DNA from: Octopus sinensis
Taxonomy: Eukaryota
NCBI RefSeq assembly: GCF_006345805.1
Contig: NW_021835991.1
Coordinates: 186,001 to 250,000 of the forward strand
Direction of reading: 5' to 3'
Length of the DNA stretch: 64,000 nt
Below, one piece after another: positions 1,561-54,305 of this stretch. Made by a program: the position numbers and the translations under genes. Position 1 is the first letter of the stretch. Each line of letters begins with the position of its first letter. Under the pieces are notes generated by a model. It did no database searches and was not told where the DNA came from. It saw nothing but the letters and a program-made list of their open reading frames with translations.

Positions 1561-3692
1561 TATATATTAAAACCAAAACAATAAATGGGTTAAAGAGAAA
1601 TTGATAACTAGAAAACTCGAACTTTTAGAGTGTTTGTTTCAACATTTAAAGCTTTTGTGATCCGGATGACTAAATTGATTAAAATATTCTTACTCATCTG
1701 GTTTGAAAGCAGATTTGTTAGATTCTTCGCGGACCTAAAATCACAAGCTAGATAAGCATGATTTTGTGTTCTGGATGTTCATTTTCATGATTTTTGGAGT
1801 TCGGTTTTTTTGGTTCAATTTTTTGATCATTTTGAATTAATCTACAAAATTTAATTTAAAGTTGACCAATTTAAATCAATAATAATAAATTATAAAGATA
1901 AAATAAATAACAAATCGAATTATCAAAATAATTTATTAATAGTTATGGAAGAATTATTCATGAGATTACACCAATATTTAATTTCTTAAACAATTATGTA
2001 CGGACATTTGTACAAATAAAGTTTATAGTCGACACTTTTATCAGTAACACCAGTTATGACAATTCGGATACTCTTTCTTGTGACGTTTTCACCAATAAAG
2101 TGTTATCAAAACATCAAATATATTTTATACGTTCAATAATTCATTTTGTCTCAATAAGTATCACAAACTGAAAACGTTATGAGCAATTCTGATTGAGAGG
2201 ACTTATCTTTCCCATAAAAATTTTGCTAAAATAAATTGATAAATTAAATGTAAATTATCATATGTTAAAAAGAGTCATTCAGTGTAATAAATGGTCTTCA
2301 CATATGGAATGCCACTTAATTGTTATTATTTGTTTCAATTAAAATCTTCATGGTGTCTCCAATAGAGTAAAAATACACTTAAAGCAGAAAAAAGTGACTA
2401 TTTATAAATAATGCAATCTGTTATACAGTGCTGGTAGAAAAAAACCGGTTTTGGAGTTACTAACTTTTTTTGACGGATAGCATTCAATTTTCCAACTGAA
2501 TTGAACTCTTTGGAGTTGATTAGATTTATAATTTTTTTTATTTATAAAAAGTTTCATTAATCGTTTAAAATTTTGAAGATTTAAATTTTTGCGTGTGAAT
2601 AAAAAACCGGTTTGCTTTATTGAGTGATATTTTAGTTATTGAATTTTGAGTTTTATAAGCAAATGTTAAATGCAAAAATTAAAGGAAAGATCCAAAAAAT
2701 ATGGGACTGCTGATAGGATTCCTGGTTCGGACGTCTTAAAAAGCTTCAGAAAACAGACATTGAAATTCTATTACATCTTATAGAGTGCGATCCAAAAAAA
2801 TCTTCTAACACGTTGAGGAATGAAATAAAACATTTAACTAGTAAGAGTGTCTGTAGAAAGATAATTGGAACTTACATGCCTGACAAAAAAATTGGATTTG
2901 TAATAAATCGACTTTTTTTTAAAATAAATTATAATTTAATTTTCTTACATCATTCTTGGTAAAATTAGAATTATTTTTTTAATTTGTAAAATTATTTTTG
3001 GCTTTTAGAATTTAATTTTAAAGCAGAATTTAAAATTTGCCGGACAAAAAAAAATTGGATTTTTGTTGTTTTTGATCTGATCTCGTATAAATGAAGCGTA
3101 ATTCAAAAATCCATTTATCTGATTTTACAAAAGGAGTAATGATTGGATATTACTCTTCAGGAAAAACAATTGAAGAGATATCTAAAAATACTGAAATTCT
3201 CAGATCAACCGTGGGATTTGTGACAAGAAAATTTTCCAAAGAAAGCACCTCTACGCGAAAAATTGGATCTGGACGTGGAGGGACATCAACTTATTAAACT
3301 GACGAATGGTTAAACTGACGGTTAACCGACTTGATTTGTTAATACAATTAATTTTATTATAAAATATTATAAGAGAAATATTTATACTGATGACTACAAA
3401 CGGAATCAGTAATACCATAAATATATGAACTATTCCCATATAATATTTCTCAATTTTTTCAAATCCCTCAATTTTCGTAGAAATACACAAATAGCCGCCA
3501 ATAGGCATTTTAAATGAGTGATAAAAAATCACGTATGGCACACATAGCATAAGCGACACCACAAGAACACACCCAAGTATAATTCTGGAGATTTTCGGGT
3601 TGCAATATGTGACATGGGCTGCGCGATACCAATGGGCCGCGTGATACCTGACGTGACCTTGAAATGTGCAATTATGACATTGATGGGATTAA

Positions 3693-4009
3693 TTTTTTTT
3701 TAAATAAAAATAACCAATAACTACAAGTTAATTAATTAAAAGCTTCAAGGGCGGGAAGCCGACGCGATCGAGAAAGAGTTAGAGCGTACTATCGCAAAGG
3801 ACATCCGCTCGAAAAACCATCTCGATTCGCGGGCGTCGCCTGTGATGGCAGACATGCGGGACCCGATCTCCTGAACGAAGCTGATTGCCTTACTGCCCAA
3901 GGAACCGGAAGTCTCAACCGCGAATGGAAGGAATTGGAACTTCTCCGTAAGTGAGGAGTACTTCCGCATCTTTTTGCATTCCGCGGTTGTGACAATAGAT
4001 CCAGGAGCG
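3693..4009 (-). mobile_element. CRE-clade retrotransposon 3' fragment
   Basis: Near-identical to the 3' end of 37524-39591 (RKYSSLTEKFQFLPFAVETSG...), with an A tail. Confidence 0.9.
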
Positions 4010-4210
4010 ACCCGCGACTCATTAAATTATAAATTTTTTAATTAGACCGCGACTCATTCTTATCATTTAATAATTTACTAAATTAGCTAAAGACTCTCTC
4101 ATTTTGACAAAAATTATATTTGTAGGAATTTAATTATCAGAAATTAATTTTTTTGGTGGAAAACCTAAATTTCTTGAGTTATTTCTAGCGTGCAAGTATA
4201 TTTTGCAGCA

Positions 4211-5138
4211 ATGTCCGCGTACAAAGGTTATGTAAAGAATAGTTTGGAATATCAAATTTTAAAAGATGCTTTACAGGATAAATTTCCTGAACATCTTACA
4301 AAGCAAAAAAAATATAGACTAGTTAAGAAAATTGAAAATTTTACTGTAATTAATGAAAGGTATCATACAAATTGTAAATGTATAGATTGTATCTTAAATG
4401 TCCGAATTCAGATCACAAGCTAGTGATTTGTCTAGACAATGAACCCGAAATGGAGATCGTTGCTAAAAGTTTGCATGACTTCTCGCATGGAGGAGTTAAC
4501 AAAATTGAATATGAATGTCGACGACGATATTTCACAGTTAAAAATGAGATTATTCGAAAAGTCATTCGAAACTGTGAAATTTGTAAATTTGCGCGACCCT
4601 TAAAAGTTTTAACTTTTTTAAATCCTAGATTGGAGATATAAATAACCATGTCTTTGCATCTTGCCCAAATGAAAGATTTCAGATAGATCTTATAGATCTG
4701 AAAAGTTTTTCTACTATAAATAAAAATTTTAAATGGATTTTAACGGTCATTGACGTATATAGCAGGTTAGTTTTTTTAACAATTTTTATAGATTTGCATT
4801 TGCAAGGCCGCTCTACACTAAGTCCTCAAATGAAGTTTGTGAAAACCACAGATCATTATTTTTCTTAAATGGTCCGTGTCAATTTCTTCAGTCCGATAAT
4901 GGGACTGAATTCAAGAATCGTGAAATGACCAATCTATGTGAGGAATTCAATATCGAATTCACGGAAGGCCAAACAATCCCCGCTCACAAGGGATTGTCGA
5001 ACGCTTCAACCAGTCAATTACAAGAAAAATGGCAAAAATGATCGACAATGATAACAAAAAGTGGCTGGAAAAATTAGAAAATGCAGATAGAAAATTCGAT
5101 GAGCGAAATTTTGATTGTGCCAATGTCCAGACTTAAAA
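4211..5138 (+). pseudogene. H2C2 + rve integrase/transposase with three GT-AG introns and one late frameshift
   Basis: Introns 4360-4385, 4606-4628 and 4766-4791 restore the frame: HDFSH...CEIC, FQIDLID, WILTVIDVYSRF, LQSDNGTEF, then (shifted) HGRPNNPRSQGIVERFNQ. Confidence 0.85.
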
Positions 5139-5151
5139 AATAATTAACAAG

Positions 5152-5250
5152 TTTTTTTTTTTTTTTTTTTAATCAATAATAACTGTAAACGAAAACAGAG
5201 AGAAAAGAGAGTTAACAAGAGGACTTCCCCGCCTCGTAGATGGAGAAACA
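5152..5250 (-). mobile_element. CRE-clade extreme 3' fragment with poly(A)
   Basis: Reads RGNCFSIYEAG, like the end of ORF 60699..61100; T19 run on the + strand. Confidence 0.7.
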
Positions 5251-5794
5251 GTTTCCACGTAAGTTATTAACAAGTTATTATTCTTTGAAGTTTAATATTA
5301 ATTACAATATTGACATTAAGTTAAGCTTCAAGGTCACGTCAGGTATCACGCGGCCCATAGGTGTCACGCAAACCATGTCACACAATATTTATTTCGTTTT
5401 AATGGATGTTTCAAAGATATATATAATTCACAAGTAAAGCACAAAATGAGCATTGGAGAGGCAAATTGAGCAAAGTAATCCGCCCACATTTATTTTGCAA
5501 GCTAAATGTGTATTCCAAAATGTAATTATTAGACATAAATTGCCTGGGAGGCCGATTATTGACCAAAAAATGAGGAAGAACCTTTCAACTTGGATTGTGT
5601 ATTCTGGATGTAGGTTGAACGAAGGGAAACTCATTTAGAATGCATTAAATTAATCTGCTTAAATATTATTTTTTGTATTAAATATATTACAAATATCCGT
5701 CAACGTCATTATTCCTTTAAATATGTCGCGAGCGCTGAGATCGATCTATCAATGATTGTCAAAGATAAAAATAATCTATTACATCAAAGTTAGT

Positions 5795-6059: not shown

Positions 6060-6340
6060 TTTAATGAACTTTCTTAATAGACCCATCACTATTTGTGACT
6101 TTGACAAAATTGTTAGACAATTTTGTTAGACTCTCTGATTGTACAAAATACAGCTTTTCGAATGTGTTTTATCCACTCATTTTTATCATCCGAACCCATC
6201 AATTTTGATAAACTCCTTGTGATTGTCTGATTAAATCTTTCAACTATCCACTGACTCTGTGGATTGTTGGGGCATCTATGAATTTGAACAATTTTGTACT
6301 CTTGACAGACTTTTCTTATATGGTCATTCTTGAGATGAAA
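6060..6340 (-). mobile_element. Integrase fragment (same Ginger-like class)
   Basis: Reads NNPQSQWIVERFNQTITRSLSKLM. Confidence 0.7.
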
Positions 6341-6344
6341 TCTG

Positions 6345-6730
6345 GGCCGCCGACTCGTCTTCGAAGATGAAACCAGAGCTAGACCAACACCGGCTAGCGT
6401 GCCTAATCTCGGCCGCACATCCTCACAGCGGCTCATGGCTCGGCGCCTACCCATCTACATCAACAGGAACCTTTTTGGATGACGACTGCCTGAGGATCGG
6501 GATCTCCCTTCGGCTTGGCCTCGACATATGCAGCATCCACCGATGCCGATGTGGAGCCAAAGTCGACGCTAAAGGGCTCCACCCTCTTTCGTGTCGCAGG
6601 AGTGCTGGTCGATGTCCCCGCCACGCCTCGTTAAATGACGTCGTGTTTAGACCCCTCAAGGCTGCAGGCTTTCCGTCACAACTTGAGCCTGTCGGATTGG
6701 ACCGTAGTGACGGCAAACGCCCAGACGGAT
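6345..6730 (+). mobile_element. CRE-clade fragment (zinc knuckle/RLE region)
   Basis: Reads DQHRLACL...CRCG...HPLSC...RH...DGKRPDG. Confidence 0.85.
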
Positions 6731-8634: not shown

Positions 8635-9165
8635 CAGTGCAACCCCTTATTGGGGCGACCCCGGACGTGGGGCACCCTCGGATTTTGGGGCACCCTCGGG
8701 TTTTGGGGCAATTTGAATTTCTATTAGGAGTTTTTCTGTTTATTCTTTATAAGATAACCCCCGTTATGGGGCATTTAATTTTATTATATTTTTTAGTTAT
8801 AATTTTGTATTTTATTTTATAATAACAAATAATAACGTGTTTCTGTTGTTTTGATGGATGTTAATTTTGATGGATGTGAAGGTTCTGAGGGCTCAGAGAA
8901 CCCGATAATTCATTTCCGACAAGGTCGTTTTGGATCGATTAATTTGACAATGGATCGATTAATTCAAAAGTACCAATTCGGAGCGAAAATAACGGATCAT
9001 TTCCCGACAAGTAAAGACTAAAATTGTTAAATGAAATTAAGAATAAACATCTTTTGGTTTTAAATTAACAAAACGTTAGTTTTTTTCGTTAATATTAGAA
9101 AACCCCTCTATCTGGGGGAACCCCTGTTTTTGGGGCACTAGGTGCCCCAAAAAGAGGTTAGACTG
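8635..9165 (+). mobile_element. pogo/Tigger internal-deletion derivative
   Basis: CAGTGCAACC...GGTTAGACTG ends with TA TSD; same family as 33509-40678 and 59429-60651. Confidence 0.85.
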
Positions 9166-9479
9166 TAACTGCAAAACCGGTTTTTTTCTACCAGCACTGT
9201 AGTTTTACGTATTCGTATAAATAATTGTAAAAATTAACAATATCTATTTTTAAAAAAAAACACGAAAAATATTTCAAAATTGACTATTTGTTTTTTTATT
9301 AGTGATAACGATGATTTAAAAAAAATTCAAAAAACTTAATGTCTTCCATTTTCAAACATATACTTTTGTTAAACGGGTATGGAAACTTTGATATAATTTA
9401 TAAAGTTCCAGATGCTTATTATTTCGGCCATTTTTAACAAGTTAATCAATTATTGTTATAAAATTAAATTCTAATTCAT

Positions 9480-10110
9480 CCACGTTAATTATTTGATTGA
9501 GAGGACGAGCAAATAGACAGGCAGTTTCCGTACAATATCGCAAGCGAAATGAGCTGAAAAAGCCAGCTAAAATCACGTCTATCGTGACTCTTCCTCGAGA
9601 TCATCAAGCCGATCTCCGAAAGGAACCTCAGGGCTTTTGGGGCGATTATCCCACTCTACTCGAAAGCCAGGGGGACGAAAATGCAGGTGTTTTTCAATGA
9701 GGATTACTTTGCGATTTTTTTCGTTTCGGCATGTGCGGAGGCTGAGCTAGGGCGGTAGGCAGAGTCGATGAGAGATGACGAGGAAAACGAGTCGACACAG
9801 GTGACGTCCCAAACGAAAGCGAGTCCCCCTTTGAACGGGAATAGCGTGGACCCATCGGGACGTTTTTCGTCACCACGGTCTAACCCAACCGGCTCCAGGA
9901 CCGAAGGGAATCCAGCGGCGTTGAGCGCGCGCTTAACAATATCATTCAAGGCGGCATGTCTGGGTATTCTGCCGGCACTGAGGCGACAAGAAAGGGGGTG
10001 TAGCCCTCTCCTGTCAATGACTTTTCCGCATCTGTACTGATGTGACTGGCAAATTTCGATCCCAAGGCGTAGACACAAACCAATGCGAACGGATTCGTTG
10101 TCCAAATTCG
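9480..10110 (-). mobile_element. CRE-clade 3' fragment, degenerate
   Basis: RLE motifs RH and DEKRPDG; homology continues past two stop codons. Confidence 0.85.
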
Positions 10111-18224: not shown

Positions 18225-18989
18225 GATAGATCAATCCTATCACCAATTAGCCCATGTTCAAATTCAGAAATCCTTTAAGGACACCAGATAATCCATATAG
18301 ACAGAATTCATCTCCATTTCATTTTCAAGCAGATAACCAATTTGTGTTTTTGTTTATTATTGTCCTTTAGATAAAACTATGAATTCGGAATTGAAAATAC
18401 CGATCATCAATTATCATAAATTGATTCGCCTTTCCTATAAGTTTGTATTTTCAGATTTAGATGTAGTACGGGTACGGGTTTTTACGGGTTTTTGGAGTAA
18501 TACATTTACCAGATTTTGATATTCACTGTCATTTTTCACGTAACCTAAGGATTGAGACTATACTGATACAACATCTTTCGGGAGATACCATCTTTTAATT
18601 AAAATGACGCTTATGATAAATTATTTTTTTTGTTTATTTAATGTCAAACTATGTAAGTCACGCTGTCAACAATGAAGGTCGCTCTGGTCGCCTGTGTAAG
18701 GCGGGCATATTAAACCAACTTCAAGATTATGAGGATTTGCCTTATGTGCGCATATCGATTCTAAGGGATGACATTGAACACCCTTCATTTTGCATCCAAA
18801 TCTCATACGAAATTTGTATGGTCCTTGTTATCATTGAAAAAATTCTGAACAACATTCTGGATTGATTTTGTACAAGCCCGGGATCCAGAATTGTGGTAGA
18901 GTATATGTTTTAGCAGTTATACATGAAAACGATACATGATAATTTGAAAATTTTCATTAATGTAATAATAATAACGATAAACTATTTTA

Positions 18990-22510: not shown

Positions 22511-22589
22511 TTTGTTTTTATTTGAAAATAACAAATTACTTTAGAATTGTGTCTATATGAGCTACATGATATTTTATTCTGTAACGTAT

Positions 22590-22655
22590 CAAGGTTACCA
22601 TAGCAACACGTAAAAGCTTCAGGTCACCCATAGGCTTCAAGTTGTCCATGTGACA
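22590..22655. mobile_element. Solitary Ginger-like terminus
   Basis: ...CCATGTGACA followed by TAATA; its reverse complement resembles the 31078 terminus. Confidence 0.6.
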
Positions 22656-22659
22656 TAAT

Positions 22660-30289: not shown

Positions 30290-31020
30290 ACTATGAAAGA
30301 TTTCAGCTAGATCTTGTAGATCTAAAAAAGTTTTCAGTCGTAAATAATAATCACAAATGGATTTTAACAGTCATCGATGTTTATAGTAGGTTTGTAGTAG
30401 GTCTCTCAACAATTTATTCAGATTTGCATTTGTCAGACCACTTTCTTCAAAAGAAGTATGCAACAACTTAAGATCACTTTTCTGCCTATATGGACATTGC
30501 AAAATTTTGCAATCAGATAATTTTTCAGAATTCAAGAATGTGTCTCTGAAACATTTCTAACGAATATTGATTTTTTAAGTACTGGGGGAAAAAACCTAGT
30601 CTTAGGTACCGCGAGCACAAAAAGGTTGGGAAACGCTGATATAAAGAAACACTAGAAAAAATCAAAGAAATAAAGAACCCCAACTTTGATACCTCGTCAA
30701 TCGAGCGGGATGAACGATACAGGCTCACAAATCGGGAAGGAAATTTTATTTTGAAACATATTTTCGAATGGGTTAAATTACGTTTTTCTGTGATGAAATC
30801 GAATTAAGTGCGTTGAGGCGCAACTTAATAAATAAAAGTTAGGCGGAACATAACCACTTTGGGAGAGATCGGCTTTTTTCGAAATTAAGAAATCTCAAAT
30901 ATGGATTGAATAGAGAAGAAATCTGTAAGGTGATTTCGTTTTGTGCTTTCTGTCTGGTAATAACTCCTTTCAGTAAATATTTCTAGTCCAAAAAAATTAT
31001 TGTCTACGAATCCTCCAATT
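30290..31020 (+). mobile_element. Two adjacent intron-containing integrase relics
   Basis: FQLDLVDL...WILTVIDVYSR|intron|FAF; then HNHFGRD...CAFC. Confidence 0.7.
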
Positions 31021-31077: not shown

Positions 31078-31954
31078 TGTCACAAGGGTGATCAGACCCC
31101 TATGGGCAACCTGGCCTTTACGTGTTCCATGGCAACTACATAGCAAATATTTACTAAAAGGCCAACTAAAATAAAGGCAATCGATCCGAACTAATGATTG
31201 AACTTTAAATTTTTGAGAAAATGATGTTTTATATTTGAACCATGCTTGCTTTAAAATAATAAAATTCTTTACAACATTAGCAAATTATAACGTGAATTAT
31301 TTTTATTTTTGATAATATAAATTGCAACATTAGCAAATTATAATTTACATCAAATTTTTTGCAAAGTTTGTAACAACTTTAACTCTAACCTTAACCCAAA
31401 CCCAAACCCTAACGTTGGCAAGTGACAACATAAATATTCAAAATCTAACCCTAACCTTAATCCAAACCCTAACGTTGGCAAGTGACAACATAAATATTCA
31501 AAATCTAAACCCTAACCTTAACCCAAACCCTAACGTTGGCAAGTGCCAACATAAATATTCAAAATCTAACCCTGACCTTAACCCAAACCCTAACTCGAAA
31601 TTAAATGATGTTTCTGCTGACGATTCTTCAGACATTTTTTACAAAAATTGGAAGCCTTTTTGGCCAACCGGTGTTTGCTTCGAGCATTCATATCCTCCGG
31701 GAATATCCCGATTAACGCTTCCTTAATTTGATTGTATTCGTTAATATTTCTGACGTAACCCTTAAACCCAGACATCACAAAGTGTGAGTAACCACGCTGT
31801 TAAAATTAATATACTTTTGGGTAAGCCATTTTAAAAGATAATTCAAATGTAATTTTAAATTAGAATAATTGATTAATCTACACTCTTCCATATATAAATT
31901 GCTATATTCAATATTTAACTGGCTGCCCATAGCGACATAGTCGCCCATGTGACA
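31078..31954 (-). mobile_element. Non-autonomous Ginger-like element with telomere-like repeats
   Basis: TGTCACA...TGTGACA ends; TSD TAATA; absent from copy B. Retains an integrase N-terminus (MSGFKGYVRNINEY...) homologous to 4211 (MSAYKGYVKNSLEY...). Confidence 0.88.
31381..31595 (+). repeat. 60-bp tandem repeat (about 3.5 units) containing TAACCC-like hexamers
   Basis: Successive 60-nt lines align directly. Confidence 0.95.
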
Positions 31955-35253: not shown

Positions 35254-35318
35254 AATTTCTATTAGGAGTTTTTCTGTTTATTCTTTATAAGATAATCCCC
35301 GTTATGGGGCATTTAATA

Positions 35319-36003
35319 TGTCACATGCCCCACGCGTTACCATTGCTCTAAATTTTTAAAATTTCAATTAAAAATATTTAGATGATTGAAATATATTTAC
35401 TTATTAATTTAAAAATTAATAATATTATGGATTTTATTTTTTCAATGCTTAACCATTAAAATTAAAAAACAATAAATTAAGCATGCTGTTTAATGTCGGG
35501 GTTAGGGCTAGGGTAAAGGTTAGGGTCAGGATTAGGGTCAGGATTAGTGTAAAGGTTAGGGTTTGAAAAAATTTGAAAGTGCTTGTTGTGATACTGTCAC
35601 GATCAAATCAATCTTACCTAATAACCGCGTTAATGTAGAATTTTCAAATAGAGATACAAAGATAGTTTACAAGAAATGAATCAAATAAAGGACAAAATAA
35701 TTAATTTTAAATTTTATAAACTATCAAATTATGTTACTTTAAAGCTTTTCACACAATTCACATTATTTAAAGTATGTTTTAATGTCCGTAGCAGTCATAA
35801 TGTTTTGTTGTATTAAAAATATTATTTTAATTTATTTATTTTAAAGCATCTTTTAGTATATCATTAAATTGTACTCTAATTAACTTTATATATAATTTGA
35901 ATTTTATGACCTTATGATTGATTTTTTAATTTTTCTAAAAAATGAAAAATCATATTTCTCAGAGGTAACGAGTGGGGCATAGTAATCGCAGAGGCATGTG
36001 ACA
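35319..36003. mobile_element. Non-autonomous TGTCACA-TIR element with (TTAGGG)-like tract
   Basis: TIR TGTCACATGCC; TSD TAATA at 35314-35318 and 36004-36008; absent from copy B; repeats at 35498-35563. Confidence 0.85.
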
Positions 36004-37453: not shown

Positions 37454-37523
37454 TAAAAATTTCTTGCAAAATAGAATTTCTCACTTGCAAAATTGGTTTT
37501 CATTACCGCAAATTTAATTTCTT

Positions 37524-39591: not shown

Positions 39592-39598
<7 letters not shown>

Positions 39599-40104: not shown

Positions 40105-40340
40105 CCGCCCTCCTCAGACTATTGGAGATTGCACCGGATAAACCTGGAGAATGGTTCTTAATCATGAACACGGACAAGACTGATGTGGTCGATGTATCAC
40201 GCTCGGATATCCCAAACTATGGAAAAATGGAGACTTTCGAAGAAGCTTGACTCTCTGCTTGGAGACCGGGAAGACATCATGCGGAGAAAGCTACTGGCCG
40301 CTGTTGCTCTAAAATCCGTCATGAAAGATTGGCTACGATA
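40105..40340 (+). mobile_element. RTE fragment inside pogo (also at about 60060-60295)
   Basis: KKLDSLLGDREDIMRRK, homologous to 17240..17518. Confidence 0.75.
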
Positions 40341-40699
40341 TTGCCCCGGGAACGCATTATATGACGGAGTTATAAAATGTCAATCTATCAAGGAACTAAT
40401 TTTTTCAATTAATGCAATGGAAGATGGCATTTTTCAGCATGCTCCAGAGATATTAAATAAATTTTATAATTTTAAGAAGTTGACAATTGATCGATTAATT
40501 CAAAAGTACAAATTCGGAGCGAAAATAACGGATCATTTCCCGACAAGTAAAGACTAAAATTGTTAAATGAAATTAAGAATAAACATCTTTTGGTTTTAAA
40601 TTTACAAAACGTTAGTTTTTTTCGTTAATATTACAAAACCCCTCTATCTGGGAAACCCCCTGAAAAGAGGTTAGACTGTATTTCAAAACAAATCTAGGC

Positions 40700-40900
40700 C
40701 TTTTTGCATAATCTGCAAAATTTCTTTGGCCAATAGTTCAATGAAATTATCAAGATTAATACACCATTTGAGAACTAGACATCTAAATCTAGTCGGATCT
40801 TCGCTTGAATATTTTCAAAATATACAAAACAAGATTGATGAACCTACAACTCTTCAAAAGTTAATCACTCATCATGCTCTTGCGCGGAAAAGGTTGAGAA
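40700..40900 (+). mobile_element. hAT (ZBED5/Buster-like) N-terminal relic
   Basis: Reads LANSSMKLSRLIHHLRTRH. Confidence 0.7.
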
Positions 40901-42589
40901 TCAGTTTTAGCTTATGATTCGACAGGATTATCAAATGTTCGATAAAGTGCATTAGAAAATTTAATAATTGCTGGGGAAAAAAAAGTTGAAAAAGGAAATT
41001 ATCATAAAAATAGACATTACATACAGCATGATTTATCTCTTTATTTCAATGTTTCTCTGGGCTGCATAAACAAAATTCTGAATAAACTGAAAACTCGACA
41101 AGTTAACAAAATTAAAAAATTCCAGTCGGAAATGTAAACCAAGCGAAATTGGACAAAAACAAAGATGGAAAATCAGATTTCCAGTAAAATGTTAACATTT
41201 GAATTTTATGCACATAGGGGCGGCCAAAGTTAAAATAAAGCATTTCGGAACACAAATTGAAAAGTCAATATTTTACAAAAATTTAAGAATTATGAATAAT
41301 AAAGAGATTAAAAAGTAATATTTTACAAAGATTTAATCAAATTTTGATCAAAACAAAAAATGCAAGAAAATAAAGTTGATAAATCGTGAAATATCAATAA
41401 AAATGAATATATATAATAGGAAGAAAATCAATTAAAAATATGCATTCAATTGAGATTAAACTAGTAAGACAATAGACACAAATTAACTGGTAAAATAACT
41501 TTTTTCAAGGTATTCTACATGTACCTAATATTTAATCAGCAATAAAATGCATATAGAAAATTATACTTTAAAAAATTTGAATAAAAGTAATAATCAACGT
41601 ACAAAAACAAAAACAAACACAACAACAGGAAAGCGTGCAGAACACGCTATTGATAATAATTCGATATTTTTATTTATTTAAAAAATAAATATTTTTAGAA
41701 AATATATAAGTTATAATTCGATAATTGATGATAGAACTTGATTATTGAAAATCCTATGAATAGAATTGTTTTTATTGTCCAAAAAACTAAAACGTAACGA
41801 ACAAGGAGAAATCGTTAACGGAAGATAAAAACAAAACACCGAAGTGTCTCTTTCAGTGTATACGCCAAGTATTGTGTTCAAACACAAGTTTTCTTCAGGA
41901 CCATCAGGATTGTGGCCGCAGAAGATACTTGAGAGTCTTCAAACCTTCCTCAAGTTGTCTCCGTAAGCCAATTTCAATACGAAACGTTTTATCTTTTCCA
42001 ACTACAGTGAATACCCCCAAATTCGCCAATTCTTAGATTAGCCTTTTTTTAAAAAATTTTAGTTTTAATGGAGATTCGCCAATTCTGAAATTCGCCACAA
42101 TTTTTTACAATTTTTAAATACAAATTAAAAAGCATGCTCAAGGTGGGTTTAGTACTACAGTCTAACCCCGGGGTGGGGCACCAAAGTGCCCCAGAAAGCG
42201 GGGGTGCCCTTCTAAACAAGGAGTCTGATTCAAACTACTGAATTATTTTTCAACGACTTTAATTACACATTTATTTCTAAGATTCCTTGTGATGGCATAT
42301 CTTAAATAGACGTCAATAACAGTTAACAACCACGAAAATTGATCATGGTCATTTACAAACCTTGAAAACTAAAATTAACTGAAAAGGTTAGATGCTAGCT
42401 AGTGTGGGTGGCTGAAAGAGTAGTTGAGAGCCTAAGGGTCACTCCAACGACTCCGCGCTGCGTATTGAATAATAGTTTTACGGAGCACGGCGACCGATAT
42501 TTGCTGAAAGAGCCAGCTCGTCTCCCACCGAACGTAAAAAACCTTGAAAATAACACAATTTTATATTTTTAGATTAATCAGAAAATCTG

Positions 42590-42948
42590 AAACCTCTAAT
42601 TCGGTACATCCACGAAAATATGACTTACGTCGTTATATTGTTTTGGTCGGACTGCAGACTGGCATTCATCGCAGTCTCTTACCACCAGAAGAATAATATT
42701 TCTTTTAGCAAAACAAAATGGTTTTCTAAACAATTCTTCTAATGCATTGTGTCCACAATAATTAGCGTCGTAAATCTCTTCTTCAATTGTTCGCATCTTC
42801 TGTTTGTTGGTTGAGGTAATAACAAGCCTGTGAATAGATAAAGAATCTTAGAGATAGAGCTTTTCGTCTATTAAAACGAATTTTTTAGCCTTCTTTGTTA
42901 GTTTATACACCAAGAAGTTGATATATTCAGTTCTTGTTTTTCGATCAT
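42590..42948 (-). mobile_element. Ginger-like integrase N-terminal relic (also at 63005-63365)
   Basis: Reads KKAKKFVLIDEKLYL...CGHN...RDCDEC. Confidence 0.65.
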
Positions 42949-47438: not shown

Positions 47439-48235
47439 AAACTTGAGCGTCTCTTGGACCAGCACAGACTAGCTTGCTTCCGTGCCAGTCGCCAACCGTA
47501 TTCTGGCTCCTGGCTTAACTGCCTTCCCACGACCCATTTGGATACCTGCCTCGACTCTGATGCCCTCCGTTTTGGAATATGCCTTCGTCTGGGACTACCG
47601 ATTTGTAATCCCCACCCCTGCCGGTGTGGATCAACGATGGACACATACGGGCTCCATGCCCTTTCCTGCAAGAAAAGCGCAGGTCGCATACCTCGTCATT
47701 CGGCTCTTAACAAGATCATTCACCATGCCCTCGAAAAGGCAGGGTATCCTTCTGTCCTTGAGCCAATTGGTCTTGACCGTGGTGATGGAAAAAGGCCTGA
47801 TGGCTCGACGTTGTTCGCTTTCGACGCTGGTAAACCACTAGTTTGGGATGCCACGTGTGTTGATTCCTTCTCTAAGTCGGCCATCAACGAATCCGCCTCT
47901 CTGCCCGGGTCCCGTGCTAATAGGGCTGAACATACAAAATCCGAAAAATACCGGGGCTTGTTAGACGGCTTTTGGTTTTGGCCAATTGTTGTTGAGACTT
48001 CGTGCGTCTTTGGCACAAAGACAGTTGATCATCTAAAGAAACTTGGCCACCTCTGTTCTTTACGCTCCAAGGATCCTAGGGAATTTACATTCCTAATCCA
48101 AAGGATCCTGTTGGCCGTTGTGCGTGGGAACAGCTGTTCCATCCGGCTTGCTGGCCGATTAATTTCTGATTAATTTGGCTTTCCATATTTTTTTAATAAA
48201 TACCTGTATTAAATGTATTTGGTGTAAGATCGTCA
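47439..48235 (+). mobile_element. CRE-clade 3' fragment
   Basis: ORF 47454..48173 with CRCG, HALSC, KRPDG, VET. Confidence 0.9.
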
Positions 48236-48506: not shown

Positions 48507-51010
48507 GGAAAGAAAGTCAAGCGGAAAAAACGTCAAGTGGAAAAAAAGTCAAGTCCGTAAGCGGAAAAAAAGTCAAGTGGAAAAAAAGTCAAGTCGTCTT
48601 TGTTTACTTTATATTGTATCTTTTTCGCAATAATAGCAACTTTTAATTTTTAACAATTTTTTTCAATACTTGACTTTTTTTCCGCTTTACTTTTTTTCCA
48701 TTTTTGAAATTTATTCCCTTATAAATTTTCGAAATTTAGCGCAAAACGGAAAAAAAGTCAAGTCCGTAATTTCGTTAACGAACTTGACTTATTTTCCGTC
48801 TTAAAATAATCGCTTTTCCTAAATCAATTTAAGAACTTCAAAGTAATAATAAAAGTGGCCTGACTTATTTGCTTAATCTTACGCCTTGATCTTAAATATT
48901 ATGCATATTGTATCTTAAATATTATGGATGCCGCAAAAATAAGTGACAAAATGGAGATAATATCATCTAACAAAGGAGGAAAAAAAATTTGTTTCAAAGG
49001 TTATATGTATACAAGGCACTCGACAACAAAAAATTATATAATTTTTAATTGTGTTAAAAAGTCTTCGCAAGGATGCAGAGGAAGCTTAAGAACAGATCAT
49101 AACTTTGAGTTTCCTAAAGAAGGAACCTCTCACAATCACGAATTAGACGAAACTCAAATAAAACTGACGAAGTTGTGCAACAAGGCAAAACTTCTTGCAA
49201 AAAAGAGCCAAGAGAATCCCTTACAAATCTATTCAAATGTTGTTTCTCAATGTGATACATCATCCAGAATTATTCTCCCTTCTGCAGATTCTTTCAAGCG
49301 AACAATAAGAAATCAACGCTTGTCTCTACATATTCCAAAAAATATTCTAGATCTAGAAGATATTCCATCATTTTTAACTTCAACTCTTGGTCCGGATTCA
49401 GAAAACTTTTTAATTTATGATAATCAAAGAAGAAACGATAGACTTTTAATATTCAGCACCAATACTAATTTAACGTTATTGGCAAATTCCAAAGTATGGT
49501 ATATGGATGGAAATTTCTCTATGGCACCATGCATATTCAAGCAAATATATTTTATCAGAATTGAGTTCAATTCCAGTCCAATTACAGTTATTTATGGAAT
49601 ATTACCTTCTAAATCAAGAAAGATTTACGAAGAATTTTTTGAGACTATTCAAAATGCAATTCATAATTTGAATTTGGAATTTTGTCTTGAAACTATTATG
49701 GCAGACTTTGAAGATTCGGTATTTCGAGCTGTCCTTGCAGTATTTGGGAGACGAATACATATTAGAGGATGTTATTATCATCTAAGGCAGTCAACCTGGA
49801 GAAAAATTCAAGAATTGCATTTAGTAAAAGAATATAAAGAAAATATTAACTTCAACATTTTTTGCGCTATGATAGACGCTCTTGCGTTTTTGCCCATTCA
49901 AGATCTGGAAGAAGGAATAGAATTCCTAATAGATAATATACCAAAAGATGTTCCAGATTCAAAATATATAGTAGATTATTTTGATCGAACATATGTTCGT
50001 GGTTATTATCGTTGCTTAAATAAACAAGAAAACCCTTTATCTGTTAGAATACAGCACATTTCTCCATTGTTCCCTCCAATTTTATGGAATGTGTATGAAG
50101 CCACGCTCAATAATGATCAAAGAACAAACAACTATTGTGAAGGATGGAACAATAAATTATACAATTTGACGGGATATCGTCATCCATCGATATGGAATAT
50201 TATATCTTCTTTTCAAAAAGAAGAAAAAATGACGAAAACAATTATTGACCAGGATTCCATCGGAAGAAAAATTACGACAAGAAAAAACAAGAGTACACTC
50301 GATCGACAACAAAGGCTGCTAAATATATGTCTGGATCGCCAAAACAGAAAAAAGACAATAGGAGAAACCCTACAAGCAATTGCATGGAATATTAAATATT
50401 CTTTTGATTCGAATTAAATAATCCTTTCATCACGTTTAATAAAAATCTTTTTTAAATATTTAAAAATTTTTAAAAATAAAGAAAATCTGGACTACTCTAA
50501 GAATTTTTGTAAAATTTATGTGATTTATTTTCCGGAAGAAATGAAACAGAATAGATAAAACAAAGGAAGCGAACTATTTCGGCAGGCGAGAAGCTAACGC
50601 GAACGAAAAAAAGTTTGCGCATACAATTGCAAGTGATATCAGTTTTAAAAAACCGATATTCTGAACCAAGCTTTTAAAATTTATTTTCACAACGTGTTGC
50701 TTAGCTGTGGCAGAACATTTAAATGAAATTACAGTCCGTAATTTCGTTAACGAACTTGACTTTTTTTCCGTTTTGCGCTAAATTTCGAAAATTTATAAGG
50801 GAATAAATTTCAAAAATGGAAAAAAAGTAAAGCGGAAAAAAAGTCAAGTATTGAAAAAATTTGTTAAAAATTAAAAGTTGCTATTATTGCGAAAAAGATA
50901 CAATATAAAGTAAACAAAGACGACTTGACTTTTTTTCCACTTGACTTTTTTTCCGCTTACGGACTTGACTTTTTTTCCACTTGACGTTTTTTCCGCTTGA
51001 CTTTCTTTCC
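48507..51010 (+). mobile_element. Mutator-like (MULE) transposon with TIRs of about 250 bp
   Basis: Near-perfect inverted ends beginning GGAAAGAAAGTCAAGCGG, built from AAAAGTCAAG repeats; no TSD seen. Confidence 0.92.
48924..50417 (+). CDS. FLYWCH + MULE transposase, 497 aa, intact
   Basis: GYMY...C...C...HNH, YMDGNF, IMADFE, GCYYH, RTNNYCEGWN. Confidence 0.92.
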   Translation: MDAAKISDKMEIISSNKGGKKICFKGYMYTRHSTTKNYIIFNCVKKSSQGCRGSLRTDHNFEFPKEGTSHNHELDETQIKLTKLCNKAKLLAKKSQENPLQIYSNVVSQCDTSSRIILPSADSFKRTIRNQRLSLHIPKNILDLEDIPSFLTSTLGPDSENFLIYDNQRRNDRLLIFSTNTNLTLLANSKVWYMDGNFSMAPCIFKQIYFIRIEFNSSPITVIYGILPSKSRKIYEEFFETIQNAIHNLNLEFCLETIMADFEDSVFRAVLAVFGRRIHIRGCYYHLRQSTWRKIQELHLVKEYKENINFNIFCAMIDALAFLPIQDLEEGIEFLIDNIPKDVPDSKYIVDYFDRTYVRGYYRCLNKQENPLSVRIQHISPLFPPILWNVYEATLNNDQRTNNYCEGWNNKLYNLTGYRHPSIWNIISSFQKEEKMTKTIIDQDSIGRKITTRKNKSTLDRQQRLLNICLDRQNRKKTIGETLQAIAWNIKYSFDSN

Positions 51011-51529: not shown

Positions 51530-51585
51530 AATTGTGCCCACGGCCGCACATTCATCGACTCACGGCCGCACTTGCGCACCCCTGA
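51530..51585. mobile_element. Isolated hAT-like terminus
   Basis: ...GGCCGCACTTGCGCACCCCTG, the reverse complement of a CAGGGGTGCGC-type end. Confidence 0.45.
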
Positions 51586-52807
51586 TCTAGACATTCAGAA
51601 TTTAAAGTGGTTATGTAATGTGTTGACTAATTATTGCATAAAGGTAACTATAAATATGAAATAAACTATTTTTAGTTAAATTAGAACAAGTAAACACAAA
51701 AATTTATTTTAAGAACACAATTTTATCAAAAGAATATTTATTCTGAATAATTTAGATAAAAATCACGAAAATCTTAAAAACATTGACAATTATCACTATT
51801 TTGACAATTAAACACAAAAAACTCATTTTTAATTCCATAAAACAGTTTGATGTTTATATTTTTTGATTTTCATTGTCAACAAATTTATAAAATAACAAAA
51901 ATTTGAGAAAAATATTTTGCTTTTATTCGTCAATATAAATTGTAAATATCGAATAATTAATTTCAAAAAAAGAAAACGCGTCTTTTGATCCAAACTAACT
52001 CCATAATAAACAAATATTATAAAAAGAGTATTGTCAGCAAATTTTTCAATAAAATTAATATGTGACATAGGCAGCTCGATACGTATGGGCAACCGGTTAC
52101 ATTTTACTTTGAAAAATTTTAATTTACCCTTGAACAAATCATCTTATTTCAATCATTAAAGATTAATGTATTTTAACAAAAAAGATTTTAAGATAAATTA
52201 TTTTTTAGTCTTTCCATCACAGTCTGTCTTGCACGGTTCAGTCCCCTGACCAGCAACTTGGCATTAATCACCAATCTAATCTCGAGATGAATTGGCCGGT
52301 CTCTCAGAATCACCAAAAATCTAAACAGTCACAAAACATTCCCACCTTTCGACAACATTTCCTCAAATTTGATCTCAAAAAATCCATTTTTCACGATAAT
52401 TTTAATAATCTTTTATTTTCAATAAACGATTTAAATGATTGATAAATTAGATAAACATTAAATTTTTTCCAAACTACAACTTTTAACGCTAATTTTTATC
52501 AACTCACAAAGTTAGGACATACAGGGAAGAGTTGTATCACGATTTTGACTAATTTGATATTACTTTATTATATATAATTATTTGATATTTTTAATAAGCA
52601 TTTAAAAGTAGCACGTTTTTTCTTGTTTTGCTGTGTTATTCACTCTTGCCTTGATCTGTGCTGTCAGTATACTCACAGCCCCGGCCACATTATAATAACT
52701 TAATTATACAAGCTTACATTCTATTTTAAATATTTCATACTGATTTTTGTATCATTTGATCATATTTTCAGCAAAAATGCAATTTCAGCTTTCAATTCAA
52801 AATAATG

Positions 52808-54305
52808 TGTCGCGACCCACGCTGGCGACCATCCCACGCTGGCGACCATCAGTTTGACAGGTTATGACCTTCAGTTTGACAGGTGATTAGTTTGATATTT
52901 AATTTAAACCGGAAAAAATTCATTTTAAGAAATGGTTTAGCGTCATTTTAGAAAAAAAAATTATGGTTTCTCTCAAAAGATGTTAGCATGAAAAAAGCGA
53001 CTCAATTTATCATTATTAATGATCGGTATATTTGCGACTCCTAACTCATAGTCTTTATCTAAAGGACGAGAATAACCAAAAACACAAATTGGTCATTTGT
53101 CTGGACAATGAAATCGAGATGAGGACACTAGCATTCGCCATTTACTAAGAATCCCACTGCGGAATACGAAAGCTTCAGAAAAAGTGCAGTGAATTCTATT
53201 TCACTGTAAAACATCCAATCATCGAACAAATTATAAAAGACTGCGAGATTTGTAAATTTGCCCTACCATTAAAAGTATTTTAAAAAAATATACCTAGGTG
53301 TCGGATTCTAATTACCATGTAACTGCAGGAAAACCCAATGAAAGATTCCAGGCAGATCTTATTGATGTTAGAAGATATAAAGAGTTTAACGATGGATCTA
53401 ATTAGATACTGACAATTATTGACATCTACAGCAAATTTGTTGTTTGCAAATCTTTAAAAAATAAAACTGCTTCTGGTAAGACTTGAAATTTAATTGAAAA
53501 GTGGTGAATAAATTCCAAAAATTGTTTTATCAAATTGGATATTGTCTGATCTTGCAAACGGACAACGGGTTGGAATTCAAAAACCAACTTATAGCTCAAC
53601 TATGCGAGGAATAAATTTGAAATAAATTAGTGTGTAATTGAGCGCTTAACTAAATAGTAACTTTTTCCTATAATACGACACACCACTCGGCGATTAATGA
53701 GACCCCCTTCAAAAGTTTAGGGGTATTTCTGGAATTAACACTGTGATTTATGAAATACCAGGTTATAATCTTATTTATAATTTAGATGAAAATAACGAGG
53801 CATGGTAAATTTACGATGTATTTATTTTTAGAAACGAATAATAAAAGATTGTGGGACAAATCCGTCATTGAAGCTACACAGATTTGAATCCCCAAATGAA
53901 GAAAAGGGAAAAATAAAAAATATAATGTCTAAATACAGATTAATGGTTAGTTGTCTTTCCTAACAAACATTTAGTTCGAATTACGAAATAGTTACTATGA
54001 ATAGAGATAAAAATGTTAAGCTTTTTGATTTTTTAGCAATTATCTTTAGTCTGTAATTAGTGTCAAACTTTTTTTTTTTTTTTTTTTTTTTATCTACAAA
54101 AGTTTAATAAAACAAGACAAAAATTACAGATAGCTAAGTTAGTTAAAGGCCTCACGAGACACCCGACCAGCCGCGCGAATGGCGAAGACGTTCCCTCGGA
54201 TCACAGCAATAGTGTCAAACTATGTAGGTCGCCCTGTCAATCTTGTCAACAATGAAGGTCGCTCTGGTCGCCAGCGTGGGATGGTCGCCAGCGTGGGTCG
54301 CGACA
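52808..54305 (+). mobile_element. Ginger-like DNA transposon with degenerate intron-containing integrase
   Basis: Perfect 41-bp TIR TGTCGCGACCCACGCTGG..., TSD TAATG; CEIC, FQADLID, IDIYSK, QTDNG. Confidence 0.88.
54069..54209 (-). mobile_element. CRE-clade extreme 3' fragment with poly(A)
   Basis: Reads AVIRGNVFAIRAAG; about 12-bp TSD TAGTGTCAAACT. Confidence 0.85.

What the first reader, a model, noticed from the sequence alone, without database searches (positions are those of the whole stretch)
3608..54305. Ginger-like DNA transposon system with a strict 5-bp YAATR target
Seen: four complete TGT...ACA elements (3608-5382, 31078-31954, 35319-36003, 52808-54305) with TSDs CAATA, TAATA, TAATA and TAATG, plus a solitary end at 22655 followed by TAATA. 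Their TIR sequences differ, so several subfamilies share the target preference. Two encode H2C2+rve integrases and one retains the integrase N-terminus. Established: Ginger/Tdd elements are TIR transposons with Gypsy-like integrases, TGT termini and 4-5-bp TSDs. Inference: a diversified, sequence-preferring lineage that may be undescribed in this host.
Basis: partly seen in the sequence, partly recalled or inferred. Interest (0 to 1): 0.78.

Follow-up and report, generated by a model that had tools for sequence, protein, structure and literature searches.

The report
Compact Ginger2/Tdd-type transposons targeting TANTA
The window holds several real copies of a small cut-and-paste-type DNA transposon that uses a retrovirus-like integrase and inserts into TAATA-like 5-bp sites; it is a new lineage of the known Ginger2/Tdd kind, not a new kind of element.

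Summary
There are four TGT...ACA elements with exact 5-bp duplications: E1 CAATA, E2 TAATA, E3 TAATA, E4 TAATG. There is the solitary right end at 22655, and I found a second solitary left end at 52061; both abut TAATA. A 96-98% identical internal duplication of the window carries the empty sites for E2 and E3, each with one TAATA, so these are true insertions.

E1 encodes an HHCC plus rve integrase. It is broken by one frameshift, lacks its C-terminus, and is split by three 23-26-nt introns. E4 is a decayed copy. E2 keeps only the integrase N-terminus. E3 is MITE-like.

The closest relatives are stand-alone 420-460-aa integrases of Microsporidia. In Dictyocoela muelleri these sit in 1.8-2.2-kb TIR elements with TATTA, TAATA and TACTA flanks. 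No reverse transcriptase is associated with them.

Sequence, motifs and a tree place the family beside Ginger2/Tdd and SCAND3/KRBA2-like proteins, not Ginger1 or Gypsy. Deep nodes are weak.

The target is best written YAWTR/TANTA, a 5-bp version of the known Ginger2 TATA preference. "Strict" is unproven: there are nine sites, and more distant relatives use other AT-only pentamers. The host is unidentified; its ultra-short introns suggest a myxozoan or dicyemid.

The parts
3608..5382 (+). E1: internally deleted Ginger2/Tdd-type element. TSD CAATA at 3603-3607 and 5383-5387. TIRs 3608-3663 and 5327-5382, each TGT plus two ~17-nt direct repeats.
4211..5136 (+). E1 integrase pseudogene. Exons 4211-4359, 4386-4605, 4629-4765, 4792-~4956. 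One frameshift near 4957, then reading to the stop at 5136. GT-AG introns 4360-4385 (26 nt), 4606-4628 (23 nt), 4766-4791 (26 nt). The C-terminal ~170 aa are missing.
   Evidence: intron positions read against the intronless P0002
3693..4009 (-). 5'-truncated LINE 3' end inserted into E1; 96.5% identical to 39261-39578.
5152..5265 (-). Second short LINE tail plus poly(A) inside E1, flanked by its own TSD ATTAACAAG (5143-5151 and 5266-5274).
31078..31954 (-). E2: non-autonomous derivative, TSD TAATA (31073-31077 and 31955-31959). Keeps the integrase N-terminal remnant at 31644-31775 on the minus strand. Carries a 60-nt tandem array of telomere-like repeats at 31381-31594.
35319..36003 (.). E3: MITE-like non-coding derivative, TSD TAATA (35314-35318 and 36004-36008). 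The left TIR lacks the first sub-repeat.
52808..54305 (+). E4: decayed integrase-bearing element, TSD TAATG (52803-52807 and 54306-54310), 41-nt perfect TIRs. A 23-nt intron at 53275-53297 sits at the site homologous to E1 intron 2. In-frame stops. LINE tail insertion 54069-54211 with its own TSD GTGTCAAAC.
22563..22655 (-). Solitary right end (E2-like TIR with two sub-repeats), followed by TAATA at 22656-22660. The interior is cut by a LINE fragment.
52061..52110 (+). Second solitary end (a left end), TGTGACATAGGCAGCTCGATACGTATGGGCAACCGG, preceded by TAATA at 52056-52060.
57909..57913 (.). Empty site for E2 in paralogous copy B: a single TAATA.
59551..59555 (.). Empty site for E3 in paralogous copy B: a single TAATA.
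6146..6427 (-). Integrase fragment (DDE 'E' region) of another copy.
18300..18692 (-). E4-family fragment with a truncated TIR.
30295..30551 (+). Integrase core fragment; its paralogous duplicate lies at 56959-57081.
42249..42907 (-). Fragment of a further integrase subfamily (N-terminus plus HHCC, with stops); duplicate at 62666-63324.
57355..57871 (+). Fragment of yet another integrase subfamily (HHCC to mid-core, with stops); partial duplicate at 30825-30971.

Best explanation
These are copies of a diversified family of compact TIR DNA transposons of the Ginger2/Tdd type.

Anatomy. An autonomous element, about 1.8-2.2 kb, would carry one gene for a 420-460-aa retrovirus-like integrase. The predicted domain order is N-terminal extension, HHCC zinc finger, DDE catalytic core, disordered linker, small beta-rich C-terminal domain. 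The gene lies between inverted ends that start TGT[C/G][A/G]C. Each end contains two tandem ~17-18-bp direct repeats, which I infer to be integrase-binding sites.

Mechanism (inferred). By analogy with retroviral and Ty3 integrases, the enzyme exposes the CA-3'OH ends. It joins them to target phosphates 5 bp apart on the two strands, and gap repair then gives the 5-bp duplication.

Target. Insertion prefers the palindromic pentamer YAWTR, mostly TAATA/TATTA, that is TA-N-TA.

Copies in the window. None is autonomous. E1 is frameshifted and C-terminally deleted. E4 is decayed. E2 and E3 are deletion derivatives that must have been moved in trans. E2 and E3 inserted after a local segmental duplication that is now 2-4% diverged.

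Shown: structure, TSDs, empty sites, integrase homology, absence of RT, target bias. Inferred: chemistry, the binding role of the sub-repeats, trans-mobilisation, and cut-and-paste as opposed to replicative movement.
For: - Exact TIR and TSD anatomy.
- Empty sites for E2 and E3.
- Pfam rve and H2C2 in E1.
- The nearest proteins are stand-alone integrases of Dictyocoela, Nosema granulosis and Pseudoloma, 38-51% identical to E1.
- An intact D. muelleri element at L001 4766-6561: ~205-nt TIRs at 98%, TGTCGCG ends, TSD TATTA, one intronless 450-aa ORF.
- Further 5-bp TSDs: L008 TAATA, L007 TACTA (one end), L004 TTAAT, L010 TTTTA.
- Best BLASTP hits among the reference integrases of Bao et al. 2010 are Ginger2.
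- By single-domain HMM score the best-ranked RT-linked protein is 187th of 259; every RT-linked protein ranks below SCAND3-like, and below all the KRBA2-like/aphid proteins tabulated except Tribolium P0193.
- In the NJ tree the family is sister to core Ginger2, and RT-linked integrases fall with Gypsy and Ginger1.
- HHCC is present and GPY/F and YPYY are absent in 17 of 17 family members.
- The profile matches PFV and Ty3 integrases. The AlphaFold model aligns over ~445 columns to full-length PFV integrase, E 2e-20.
- Target statistics.
- Family definitions from PMC2836005 and PMC10045372.
Against: - Deep tree nodes are weak: 26% for monophyly of the family, 9% for the sister grouping with core Ginger2, 34% for the Ginger2+Polinton+family supergroup.
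- The target sample is small: 6 sites here and 3 in Dictyocoela.
- More distant relatives do not show YAWTR.
- There is no intact copy in the window, so current activity is not shown.
- No excision footprint was seen, so cut-and-paste is assumed.
- The elements are much smaller than described Ginger2 (2.7-6.7 kb).
- The family keeps a C-terminal module colinear with the Gypsy GPY/F domain, which Ginger2 was described as lacking.
Confidence: 0.85

Rival explanations
1. The elements are TIR DNA transposons, but the integrase was recruited independently from an LTR-retrotransposon (Gypsy/Ty3-like) integrase. On this reading the family is a third 'Ginger' lineage, not a branch of Ginger2/Tdd.
For: - Deep bootstraps are low.
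- The profile matches Ty3 integrase over positions 34-414, including the C-terminal module.
- The C-terminal block is colinear with the GPY/F module of an RT-linked integrase.
- Whole-protein scores of some RT-bearing proteins were high.
Against: - Those high scores come from 2-4 integrase copies in fused gene models. Per domain they score at most 132 bits, against 199 for SCAND3-like and 131-170 for KRBA2-like and aphid proteins.
- RT-linked integrases fall on the other side of the tree.
- The C-terminal-domain-only HMM similarity is not significant: 2-6 bits, E above 0.2.
Confidence: 0.1
2. The short elements E2 and E3 are solo LTRs, and the integrase-bearing ones are remnants of LTR retrotransposons; TG...CA ends and 5-bp TSDs fit both.
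For: TG..CA termini with short inverted ends and 5-bp TSDs are also typical of LTRs. E2 and E3 have only 7-12 nt of clean terminal inversion. Random sequence gives about 1 such pair per window.
Against: - E1 and E4 have 41-56-nt inverted, not direct, terminal repeats enclosing only an integrase.
- The intact D. muelleri element is 1.8 kb with ~205-nt TIRs and no RT.
- E2 carries the integrase N-terminus at the expected distance from its end.
- All ends share the TGT plus two-sub-repeat architecture.
- The RT ORFs in the window end in poly(A), are 5'-truncated and have long TSDs, so they are LINEs.
Confidence: 0.01
3. The integrase fragments derive from Polinton/Maverick elements.
For: In the first small tree the family grouped next to Polintons at 35% support. 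P0013, P0015 and P0016 from the first search are Polinton-like.
Against: - Polintons have 6-bp TSDs and no HHCC motif (PMC10045372).
- Here the TSD is 5 bp, HHCC is present in 17 of 17 members, and the elements are 0.7-2.2 kb with a single gene.
- With more taxa, Polintons separate from the family.
Confidence: 0.02

Closest known systems
Ginger2/Tdd superfamily: TDD-4 and TDD-5 of Dictyostelium (Bao, Kapitonov & Jurka 2010, PMC2836005)
   Same: TIR DNA transposon with an HHCC+DDE integrase; TGTNR termini; 5-bp TSD; no GPY/F or YPYY motif; no RT.
   Different: - TDD-4 and TDD-5 are 3.8 kb with 260-297-bp TIRs and a large insertion in the catalytic core.
- Here elements are about 1.8 kb, with 40-205-bp TIRs built from two short sub-repeats.
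- In the tree, TDD-4/5 are not the nearest Ginger2 branch.
Metazoan Ginger2 (Ginger2-1_BF, _TS, _LS, _AP, _NV) and the derived SCAND3/KRBA2-like genes
   Same: Best sequence matches outside the family, 29-39% identity, within the ~30% range quoted for Ginger2. AT-rich palindromic target centred on TA..TA. MITE derivatives are known (PMC3845634).
   Different: - They make 4-bp TSDs (TATA within RTATAY) and are 2.7-6.7 kb.
- This family makes 5-bp TSDs (TA-N-TA).
- It forms its own clade: 69% support for a 17-taxon core including WIN_E1, 26% for the whole family.
Ginger1
   Same: TIRs, TGTNR ends, Gypsy-like integrase with HHCC.
   Different: Ginger1 has CCGG/CCGT 4-bp TSDs, YPYY and GPY/F motifs, and C-terminal OTU or Ulp1 protease domains. 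None of these is seen here. It lies in a different part of the tree.
Retroviral and Ty3 integrases (PFV intasome 3L2Q/3OY9; Ty3 7Q5B)
   Same: Same multi-domain fold and order, with DDE chemistry inferred. A 4-6-bp staggered strand transfer is the norm for this enzyme class.
   Different: Those enzymes are made as part of Pol and act on reverse-transcribed DNA. Here the gene stands alone between TIRs.
Polinton/Maverick, IS3EU/GingerRoot, IS481EU
   Same: Eukaryotic DNA transposons with IS3/IS481/integrase-related DDE enzymes.
   Different: - They have no HHCC motif.
- TSDs are 6 bp (Polinton, IS3EU/GingerRoot) or about 4, 15 or 25 bp (IS481EU).
- IS3EU/GingerRoot termini are TA..TA.

Membership tests
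Ginger2/Tdd | Encodes a DDE (rve) integrase-like transposase | tested here: met
   E1 rve 1.5e-13; E4 rve 5.7e-8. D, D and E are recognisable in E1.
Ginger2/Tdd | N-terminal HHCC (H2C2) zinc finger | tested here: met
   Integrase_H2C2 1.1e-6 in E1. The HHCC pattern is present in 17 of 17 family proteins.
Ginger2/Tdd | Terminal inverted repeats, no LTRs | tested here: met
   E1 56-89 nt, E4 41-49 nt, D. muelleri ~205 nt. E2 and E3 TIRs are short but share the same architecture.
Ginger2/Tdd | Termini TGTNR...YNACA | tested here: met
   TGTGA, TGTCA and TGTCG at all ten ends in the window and at every end found in the related loci L001, L004-L008 and L010.
Ginger2/Tdd | TSD of 4 or 5 bp | tested here: met
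   5 bp in 4 of 4 complete window copies, two of them checked against empty sites, and in 4 of 4 complete copies in other loci.
Ginger2/Tdd | No RT or RNase H in the element | tested here: met
   Elements are 0.7-2.2 kb with a single ORF. In the local RT screen none of the 186 best-ranked (of 259) family proteins carries an RT/RNase H segment.
Ginger2/Tdd | Lacks GPY/F and YPYY motifs | tested here: met
   No such motif in 17 of 17 proteins. A colinear but non-significant GPY/F-like C-terminal module exists.
Ginger2/Tdd | Integrase groups phylogenetically with Ginger2/Tdd | tested here: inconclusive
   Best hits and HMM ranking favour Ginger2. The NJ tree places the family as sister to core Ginger2, but with 9-34% bootstrap.
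Ginger2/Tdd | AT-rich palindromic target (RTATAY/TATA) | tested here: inconclusive
   Related but not identical: YAWTR/TANTA with a 5-bp stagger, in 6 of 6 window sites and 3 of 3 D. muelleri sites.
Ginger1 | CCGG/CCGT 4-bp TSD; YPYY and GPY/F motifs; OTU or Ulp1 C-terminal domain | tested here: not met
   TSDs are 5-bp and AT-rich. The motifs are absent. No protease domain was found.
LTR retrotransposon or solo LTR | Direct long terminal repeats flanking gag-pol with RT | tested here: not met
   The ends are inverted and the interior is integrase only. RT-linked integrases are distant.
Polinton/Maverick | 6-bp TSD, integrase without HHCC, 15-20 kb with pPolB and capsid genes | tested here: not met
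   5-bp TSD, HHCC present, elements of 2.2 kb or less.
IS3EU/GingerRoot | TA..TA termini, 6-bp TSD, no HHCC | tested here: not met
   TGT..ACA termini, 5-bp TSD, HHCC present.

The most novel reading that the evidence does not exclude
The family is a distinct, previously unnamed 'compact Ginger' lineage. Its features would be about 1.8 kb in length, double sub-repeat TIRs, a retained SH3/GPY/F-like C-terminal domain, a 5-bp TSD and a near-strict TA-N-TA target. It would be sister to, not inside, Ginger2. It would have spread horizontally among intracellular and tissue parasites (microsporidia and an animal with ultra-short introns, such as a myxozoan or dicyemid), acquiring host-type 23-26-nt introns after arrival.
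Probability: 0.3. Interest if true: 0.6.

Novelty: new member of a known kind. Interest (0 to 1): 0.45.

Why it matters
1. It adds a well-delimited, very compact branch to the small Ginger2/Tdd superfamily. It also shows that the 'Gag-Pol polyprotein' annotations of these proteins in Dictyocoela and Nosema are DNA-transposon integrases.
2. TATA with a 4-bp stagger in classical Ginger2, against TA-N-TA with a 5-bp stagger here, is a natural pair. It could be used to ask how integrase geometry sets stagger length and target choice.
3. The element has intronless copies in microsporidia and copies with 23-26-nt introns here. That gives a dated-by-context case of intron gain in a transposon, and a possible trace of transposon exchange between parasites.
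4. Practically, the TIR and TSD rule allows clean annotation of these elements and their MITEs in the host genome.

Tried and rejected
- Host identification failed. An exact look-up of a window ORF found nothing. A Cbf5/dyskerin search gave at most 68% identity to a mix of animals and fungi. Only the ultra-short introns point to myxobolid myxozoans or Dicyema (PMC13644364).
- High whole-protein scores of RT-bearing proteins in the exhaustive search first looked like evidence for an LTR origin. Per-domain scoring showed they were sums over several integrase copies in fused models.
- An HMM of the C-terminal domain alone found no significant match to Gypsy C-terminal domains or to Ginger2-like proteins. 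Pfam gives no C-terminal domain either.
- Short Logan contigs (L005, L006, L009) gave only single ends or none.
- No partner end was found for the solitary ends at 22655 and 52061.
- Literature searches for Ginger in Myxozoa, Dicyema or Dictyocoela found no description of this lineage.
- Only Muszewska 2017 lists 'Ginger' in microsporidia, and only by its rve domain.
- The retroviral integrase rows in the supplement of Bao et al. were not needed and were left out of my reference set.

Full report
**1. Observation**

Reading the sequence confirms every coordinate in the finding.

| Element | Coordinates | Left junction | Right junction |
|---|---|---|---|
| E1 | 3608-5382 | CAATA\|TGTGACATGG | CCATGTCACA\|CAATA |
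| E2 | 31078-31954 | TAATA\|TGTCACAAGG | CCATGTGACA\|TAATA |
| E3 | 35319-36003 | TAATA\|TGTCACATGCC | GGCATGTGACA\|TAATA |
| E4 | 52808-54305 | TAATG\|TGTCGCGACC | GGTCGCGACA\|TAATG |

The solitary end ...CCATGTGACA|TAATA is at 22655.

- The inverted-repeat finder gives E1 arms of 89 nt at 78% (56 nt at 91% by BLAST). E4 arms are 49 nt at 94% (41 nt perfect).
- A blind scan for TGT...ACA pairs with a 14-nt TIR (at most 3 mismatches) and an exact 5-bp duplication returns exactly these four and nothing else.
- The same scan on Markov-shuffled windows gives 0.93 hits on average. For the short-TIR elements E2 and E3, that criterion alone would therefore not be convincing.

**2. Empty sites**

The window contains its own control. 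Segment A (30384-42948) is duplicated as segment B (56912-63365) at 96-98% identity.
- B lacks E2 and E3.
- Joining the A flanks while keeping one TSD copy gives a colinear alignment to B. There are no gaps for E2, and one TT indel in a T-run for E3.
- B has a single TAATA at each site, 57909-57913 and 59551-59555.

E2 and E3 are therefore genuine insertions that duplicated 5 bp. They are younger than the duplication.

**3. More copies**

- The junction pattern YAWTR+TGTSRC occurs 10 times against 0.88 expected; 0 of 100 shuffles reach 10.
- Nine of these are the known ends. The tenth is a second solitary end, a left end at 52061 preceded by TAATA.
- tblastn and BLASTN also find integrase or element fragments at six places, counting the segmental duplicates once:
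  - 6146-6427 (-)
  - 18300-18692 (-)
  - 30295-30551 (+), duplicate 56959-57081
  - 42249-42907 (-), duplicate 62666-63324
  - 57355-57871 (+), partial duplicate 30825-30971
- E1 and E4 are 69% identical in coding DNA. E2 and E3 share nothing with each other, or with E1 and E4, apart from one short telomere-like repeat match between E2 and E3.

**4. Coding content**

- E1's spliced conceptual product has rve (1.5e-13) and Integrase_H2C2 (1.1e-6), both above Pfam's cut-offs.
- Compared with intronless homologues, E1 is interrupted by three GT-AG introns of 26, 23 and 26 nt: 4360-4385, 4606-4628 and 4766-4791.
- E1 has one frameshift just before the HGRPNNPRSQGIVERFNQ block that holds the catalytic E, and it lacks about 170 C-terminal residues.
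- E4 has a 23-nt intron at the position homologous to E1's second intron. It also has in-frame stops and a deletion next to the catalytic E. Its rve score is 33.4 bits against a cut-off of 32.6, and H2C2 is sub-threshold.
- E2 retains 44 N-terminal codons (31644-31775, minus strand; 50% identical to E1).
- E3 has no coding remnant.
- Both E1 and E4 have been hit by 5'-truncated LINE tails that carry their own TSDs, ATTAACAAG and GTGTCAAAC.
- No copy in the window is autonomous.

**5. Relatives**

- The closest proteins in 5.8 billion are stand-alone 360-460-aa integrases annotated 'Gag-Pol polyprotein' or 'transposable element'. They come from the microsporidia Dictyocoela roeselum and D. muelleri (48-51% identical), Nosema granulosis and Pseudoloma neurophilia (38-48%), plus unnamed Logan and JGI contigs.
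- In D. muelleri contig SDVU01000034, the 450-aa intronless gene sits in a 1796-bp element (L001 4766-6561). It has ~205-nt TIRs at 98%, ends TGTCGCGCGC..., and TSD TATTA.
- Other loci:

| Locus | Source | Span | TSD or flank |
|---|---|---|---|
| L008 | D. muelleri | 469-2655 | TAATA |
| L007 | D. muelleri | right end only | TACTA |
| L004 | Logan | 45-1303 | TTAAT |
| L010 | JGI | 484-2425 | TTTTA |

- Single ends in L005 and L006 give TTAAA and ATAAT.
- Every complete copy has a 5-bp TSD.
- All ends share one architecture: TGT[C/G][A/G]C followed by two tandem ~17-18-nt direct repeats. Occasionally there is one repeat or three.
- An exhaustive HMM search lists, among its best 150, many full-length stand-alone representatives (at 50% identity clustering), mostly on 1.5-2.9-kb contigs. 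That contig size fits collapsed repeats about the size of the element.

**6. Classification**

Bao et al. 2010 (PMC2836005) define the two Ginger groups as follows.

| Group | TSD | Motifs and other features |
|---|---|---|
| Ginger1 | 4 bp, CCGG/CCGT | YPYY, GPY/F, OTU or Ulp1 domains |
| Ginger2/Tdd | 4 bp (TATA within RTATAY) in animals; 5 bp in TDD-4/5 | HHCC and DDE, without GPY/F or YPYY; TGTNR ends |

Kojima 2023 (PMC10045372) adds that Polinton, IS3EU/GingerRoot and IS481EU lack HHCC and have other TSD lengths.

I took the reference integrases from the alignment supplement of Bao et al..
- E1 and its relatives hit Ginger2 references best: Ginger2-1_BF, M. globosa, _TS and _LS at 29-39% identity.
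- A profile search finds SCAND3-like, KRBA2-like and aphid proteins as the next named relatives. These names mark Ginger2-derived genes (PMC3575427 abstract).
- Some RT-bearing proteins had high whole-protein scores. Those are fused models with 2-4 integrase copies.
- Per domain, RT-bearing proteins score at most 132 bits and rank 187th or lower of 259. All of them rank below SCAND3-like (199 bits), and below the KRBA2-like and aphid proteins tabulated (131-170 bits) except Tribolium P0193, which ranks 191st.
- In a 90-taxon NJ tree, WIN_E1 groups with the Dictyocoela proteins at 97%.
- A 17-taxon core of the stand-alone family, including WIN_E1, has 69% support. The whole family (33 taxa) is monophyletic at only 26%.
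- The family is sister to core Ginger2 plus the SCAND3/KRBA2-like proteins; that core clade has 86% support. All RT-linked integrases fall with Gypsy, Ginger1 and BEL.
- Deep bootstraps are low, 9-34%.
- HHCC is present and GPY/F and YPYY are absent in 17 of 17 members.

Conclusion: every defining structural feature of Ginger2/Tdd is met. The phylogenetic placement is compatible but not robust.

**7. Enzyme**

- The family profile matches PFV integrase (1.5e-22; zinc finger plus core) and Ty3 integrase over positions 34-414.
- The AlphaFold model of P0002 has mean pLDDT 68. The domains are confident and the linker at 286-384 is disordered. It shows an N-terminal helical/hairpin module, a helical HHCC domain, an RNase-H-like core and a beta-rich C-terminal domain.
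- Foldseek aligns about 445 columns to full-length PFV integrase at E 2e-20.
- The C-terminal block is colinear with the Gypsy GPY/F module, but the similarity is not significant on its own.
- The mechanism is therefore inferred: retroviral-type 3'-end processing and concerted strand transfer across 5 bp.

**8. Target**

- Window flanks are CAATA, TAATA x4 and TAATG. All 6 are YAATR, which makes up 0.75% of the window's pentamers.
- Relative to the integrase gene, E2 reads TATTA, and D. muelleri has both TATTA and TAATA. The site is therefore the palindrome YAWTR, mostly TA-N-TA.
- In D. muelleri, 3 of 3 flanks are TANTA against a 1.2% background.
- More distant members show other AT-only pentamers in genomes of 24-35% GC. 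The preference is thus a property of the window-plus-Dictyocoela subclade. 'Strict' is not established.
- It resembles the known Ginger2 TATA preference with one extra central base.

**9. Host**

- The host gene Cbf5 (about 11000-12460, minus strand) and the transposon genes have 23-26-nt introns.
- Among animals, introns this short are reported only for myxobolid myxozoans and Dicyema (PMC13644364).
- Cbf5 has no close relative in the database (at most 68% identity), so the host stays unidentified.

**10. Verdict**

This is a correct first-stage call. The feature is real: a new, compact lineage of the known Ginger2/Tdd kind, with a TA-N-TA 5-bp target preference. It is of moderate interest, mainly for integrase target and stagger evolution, for parasite-to-parasite transposon distribution, and for intron gain in a transposon.

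Noticed in passing
window 30384-42948 and 56912-63365: Segmental duplication at 96-98% identity. Copy A has gained E2, a LINE (33603-35286, ~26-bp TSD), E3 and a 3.6-kb TIR element (36158-39770). Copy B has gained a LINE tail (60736-61147).
   Followed up: partly
window 48507-51010: MULE-type element with 261-nt TIRs at 99% identity and an intact 497-aa FLYWCH plus MULE transposase ORF (48924-50417). It looks young and possibly active.
   Followed up: no
window 36158-39770: Element with degenerate 110-150-nt inverted ends. It carries a DDE_3 (Tc1/pogo-like) 313-aa ORF (36512-37453) and a nested LINE RT ORF (37582-39525). It is absent from paralogous copy B.
   Followed up: no
window 2424-2460 and 9165-9201: A 37-nt inverted repeat, TACAGTGCTGGTAGAAAAAAACCGG... 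(97%), brackets E1. These are Tc1/mariner-like ends, so E1 may be nested in a larger element.
   Followed up: no
window 25553-29080 (-), 37582-39525, 47454-48173, 24684-25196 (-), 9704-10105 (-), 60699-61100: The LINE ORFs carry a C-terminal CxxC...H...C plus (K/R)PD...D...E block, resembling the restriction-like endonuclease of R2-supergroup non-LTR elements. Pfam reports only RVT_1. Three 5'-truncated tails of these LINEs lie inside E1 and E4.
   Followed up: partly
window 31381-31594 (E2) and 35498-35565 (E3): Both non-autonomous elements carry arrays of degenerate telomere-like (TTAGGG/CCCTAA) repeats. In E2 they form a 60-nt tandem unit repeated about 3.5 times.
   Followed up: no
window 4360-4385, 4606-4628, 4766-4791, 53275-53297: The transposon integrase genes contain 23-26-nt GT-AG introns, one of them at the same site in E1 and E4. 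All microsporidian homologues are intronless. This implies intron gain in the transposon within this host lineage.
   Followed up: partly
window ~11000-12460 (-): A host Cbf5/dyskerin gene split by many ~25-nt introns. Its best database identity is only 68%, so the host has no close sequenced relative in the protein collection.
   Followed up: partly
window 57870-57950 and 31020-31077 / 31955-32000: E2 inserted into a short tandem array of a 33-nt unit, TGTGTAAAGTTAGGGGCGTTTRTTTAATA. Each unit itself ends in TAATA followed by TGTGT, so the target looks like a TSD-plus-terminus junction.
   Followed up: no
L001, L002, L007, L008 (D. muelleri); L003 (N. granulosis): Public annotations call these stand-alone transposon integrases 'Gag-Pol', 'Gag-Pro-Pol' or 'Tf2-11 polyprotein'. 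No RT is present in the elements.
   Followed up: yes
window 45330-45668 (-): An ORF fragment that by eye resembles a superfamily-1 helicase motif II/III region (DExx...GDxxQLPP). It was not searched and not assigned to a host gene or a transposon.
   Followed up: no
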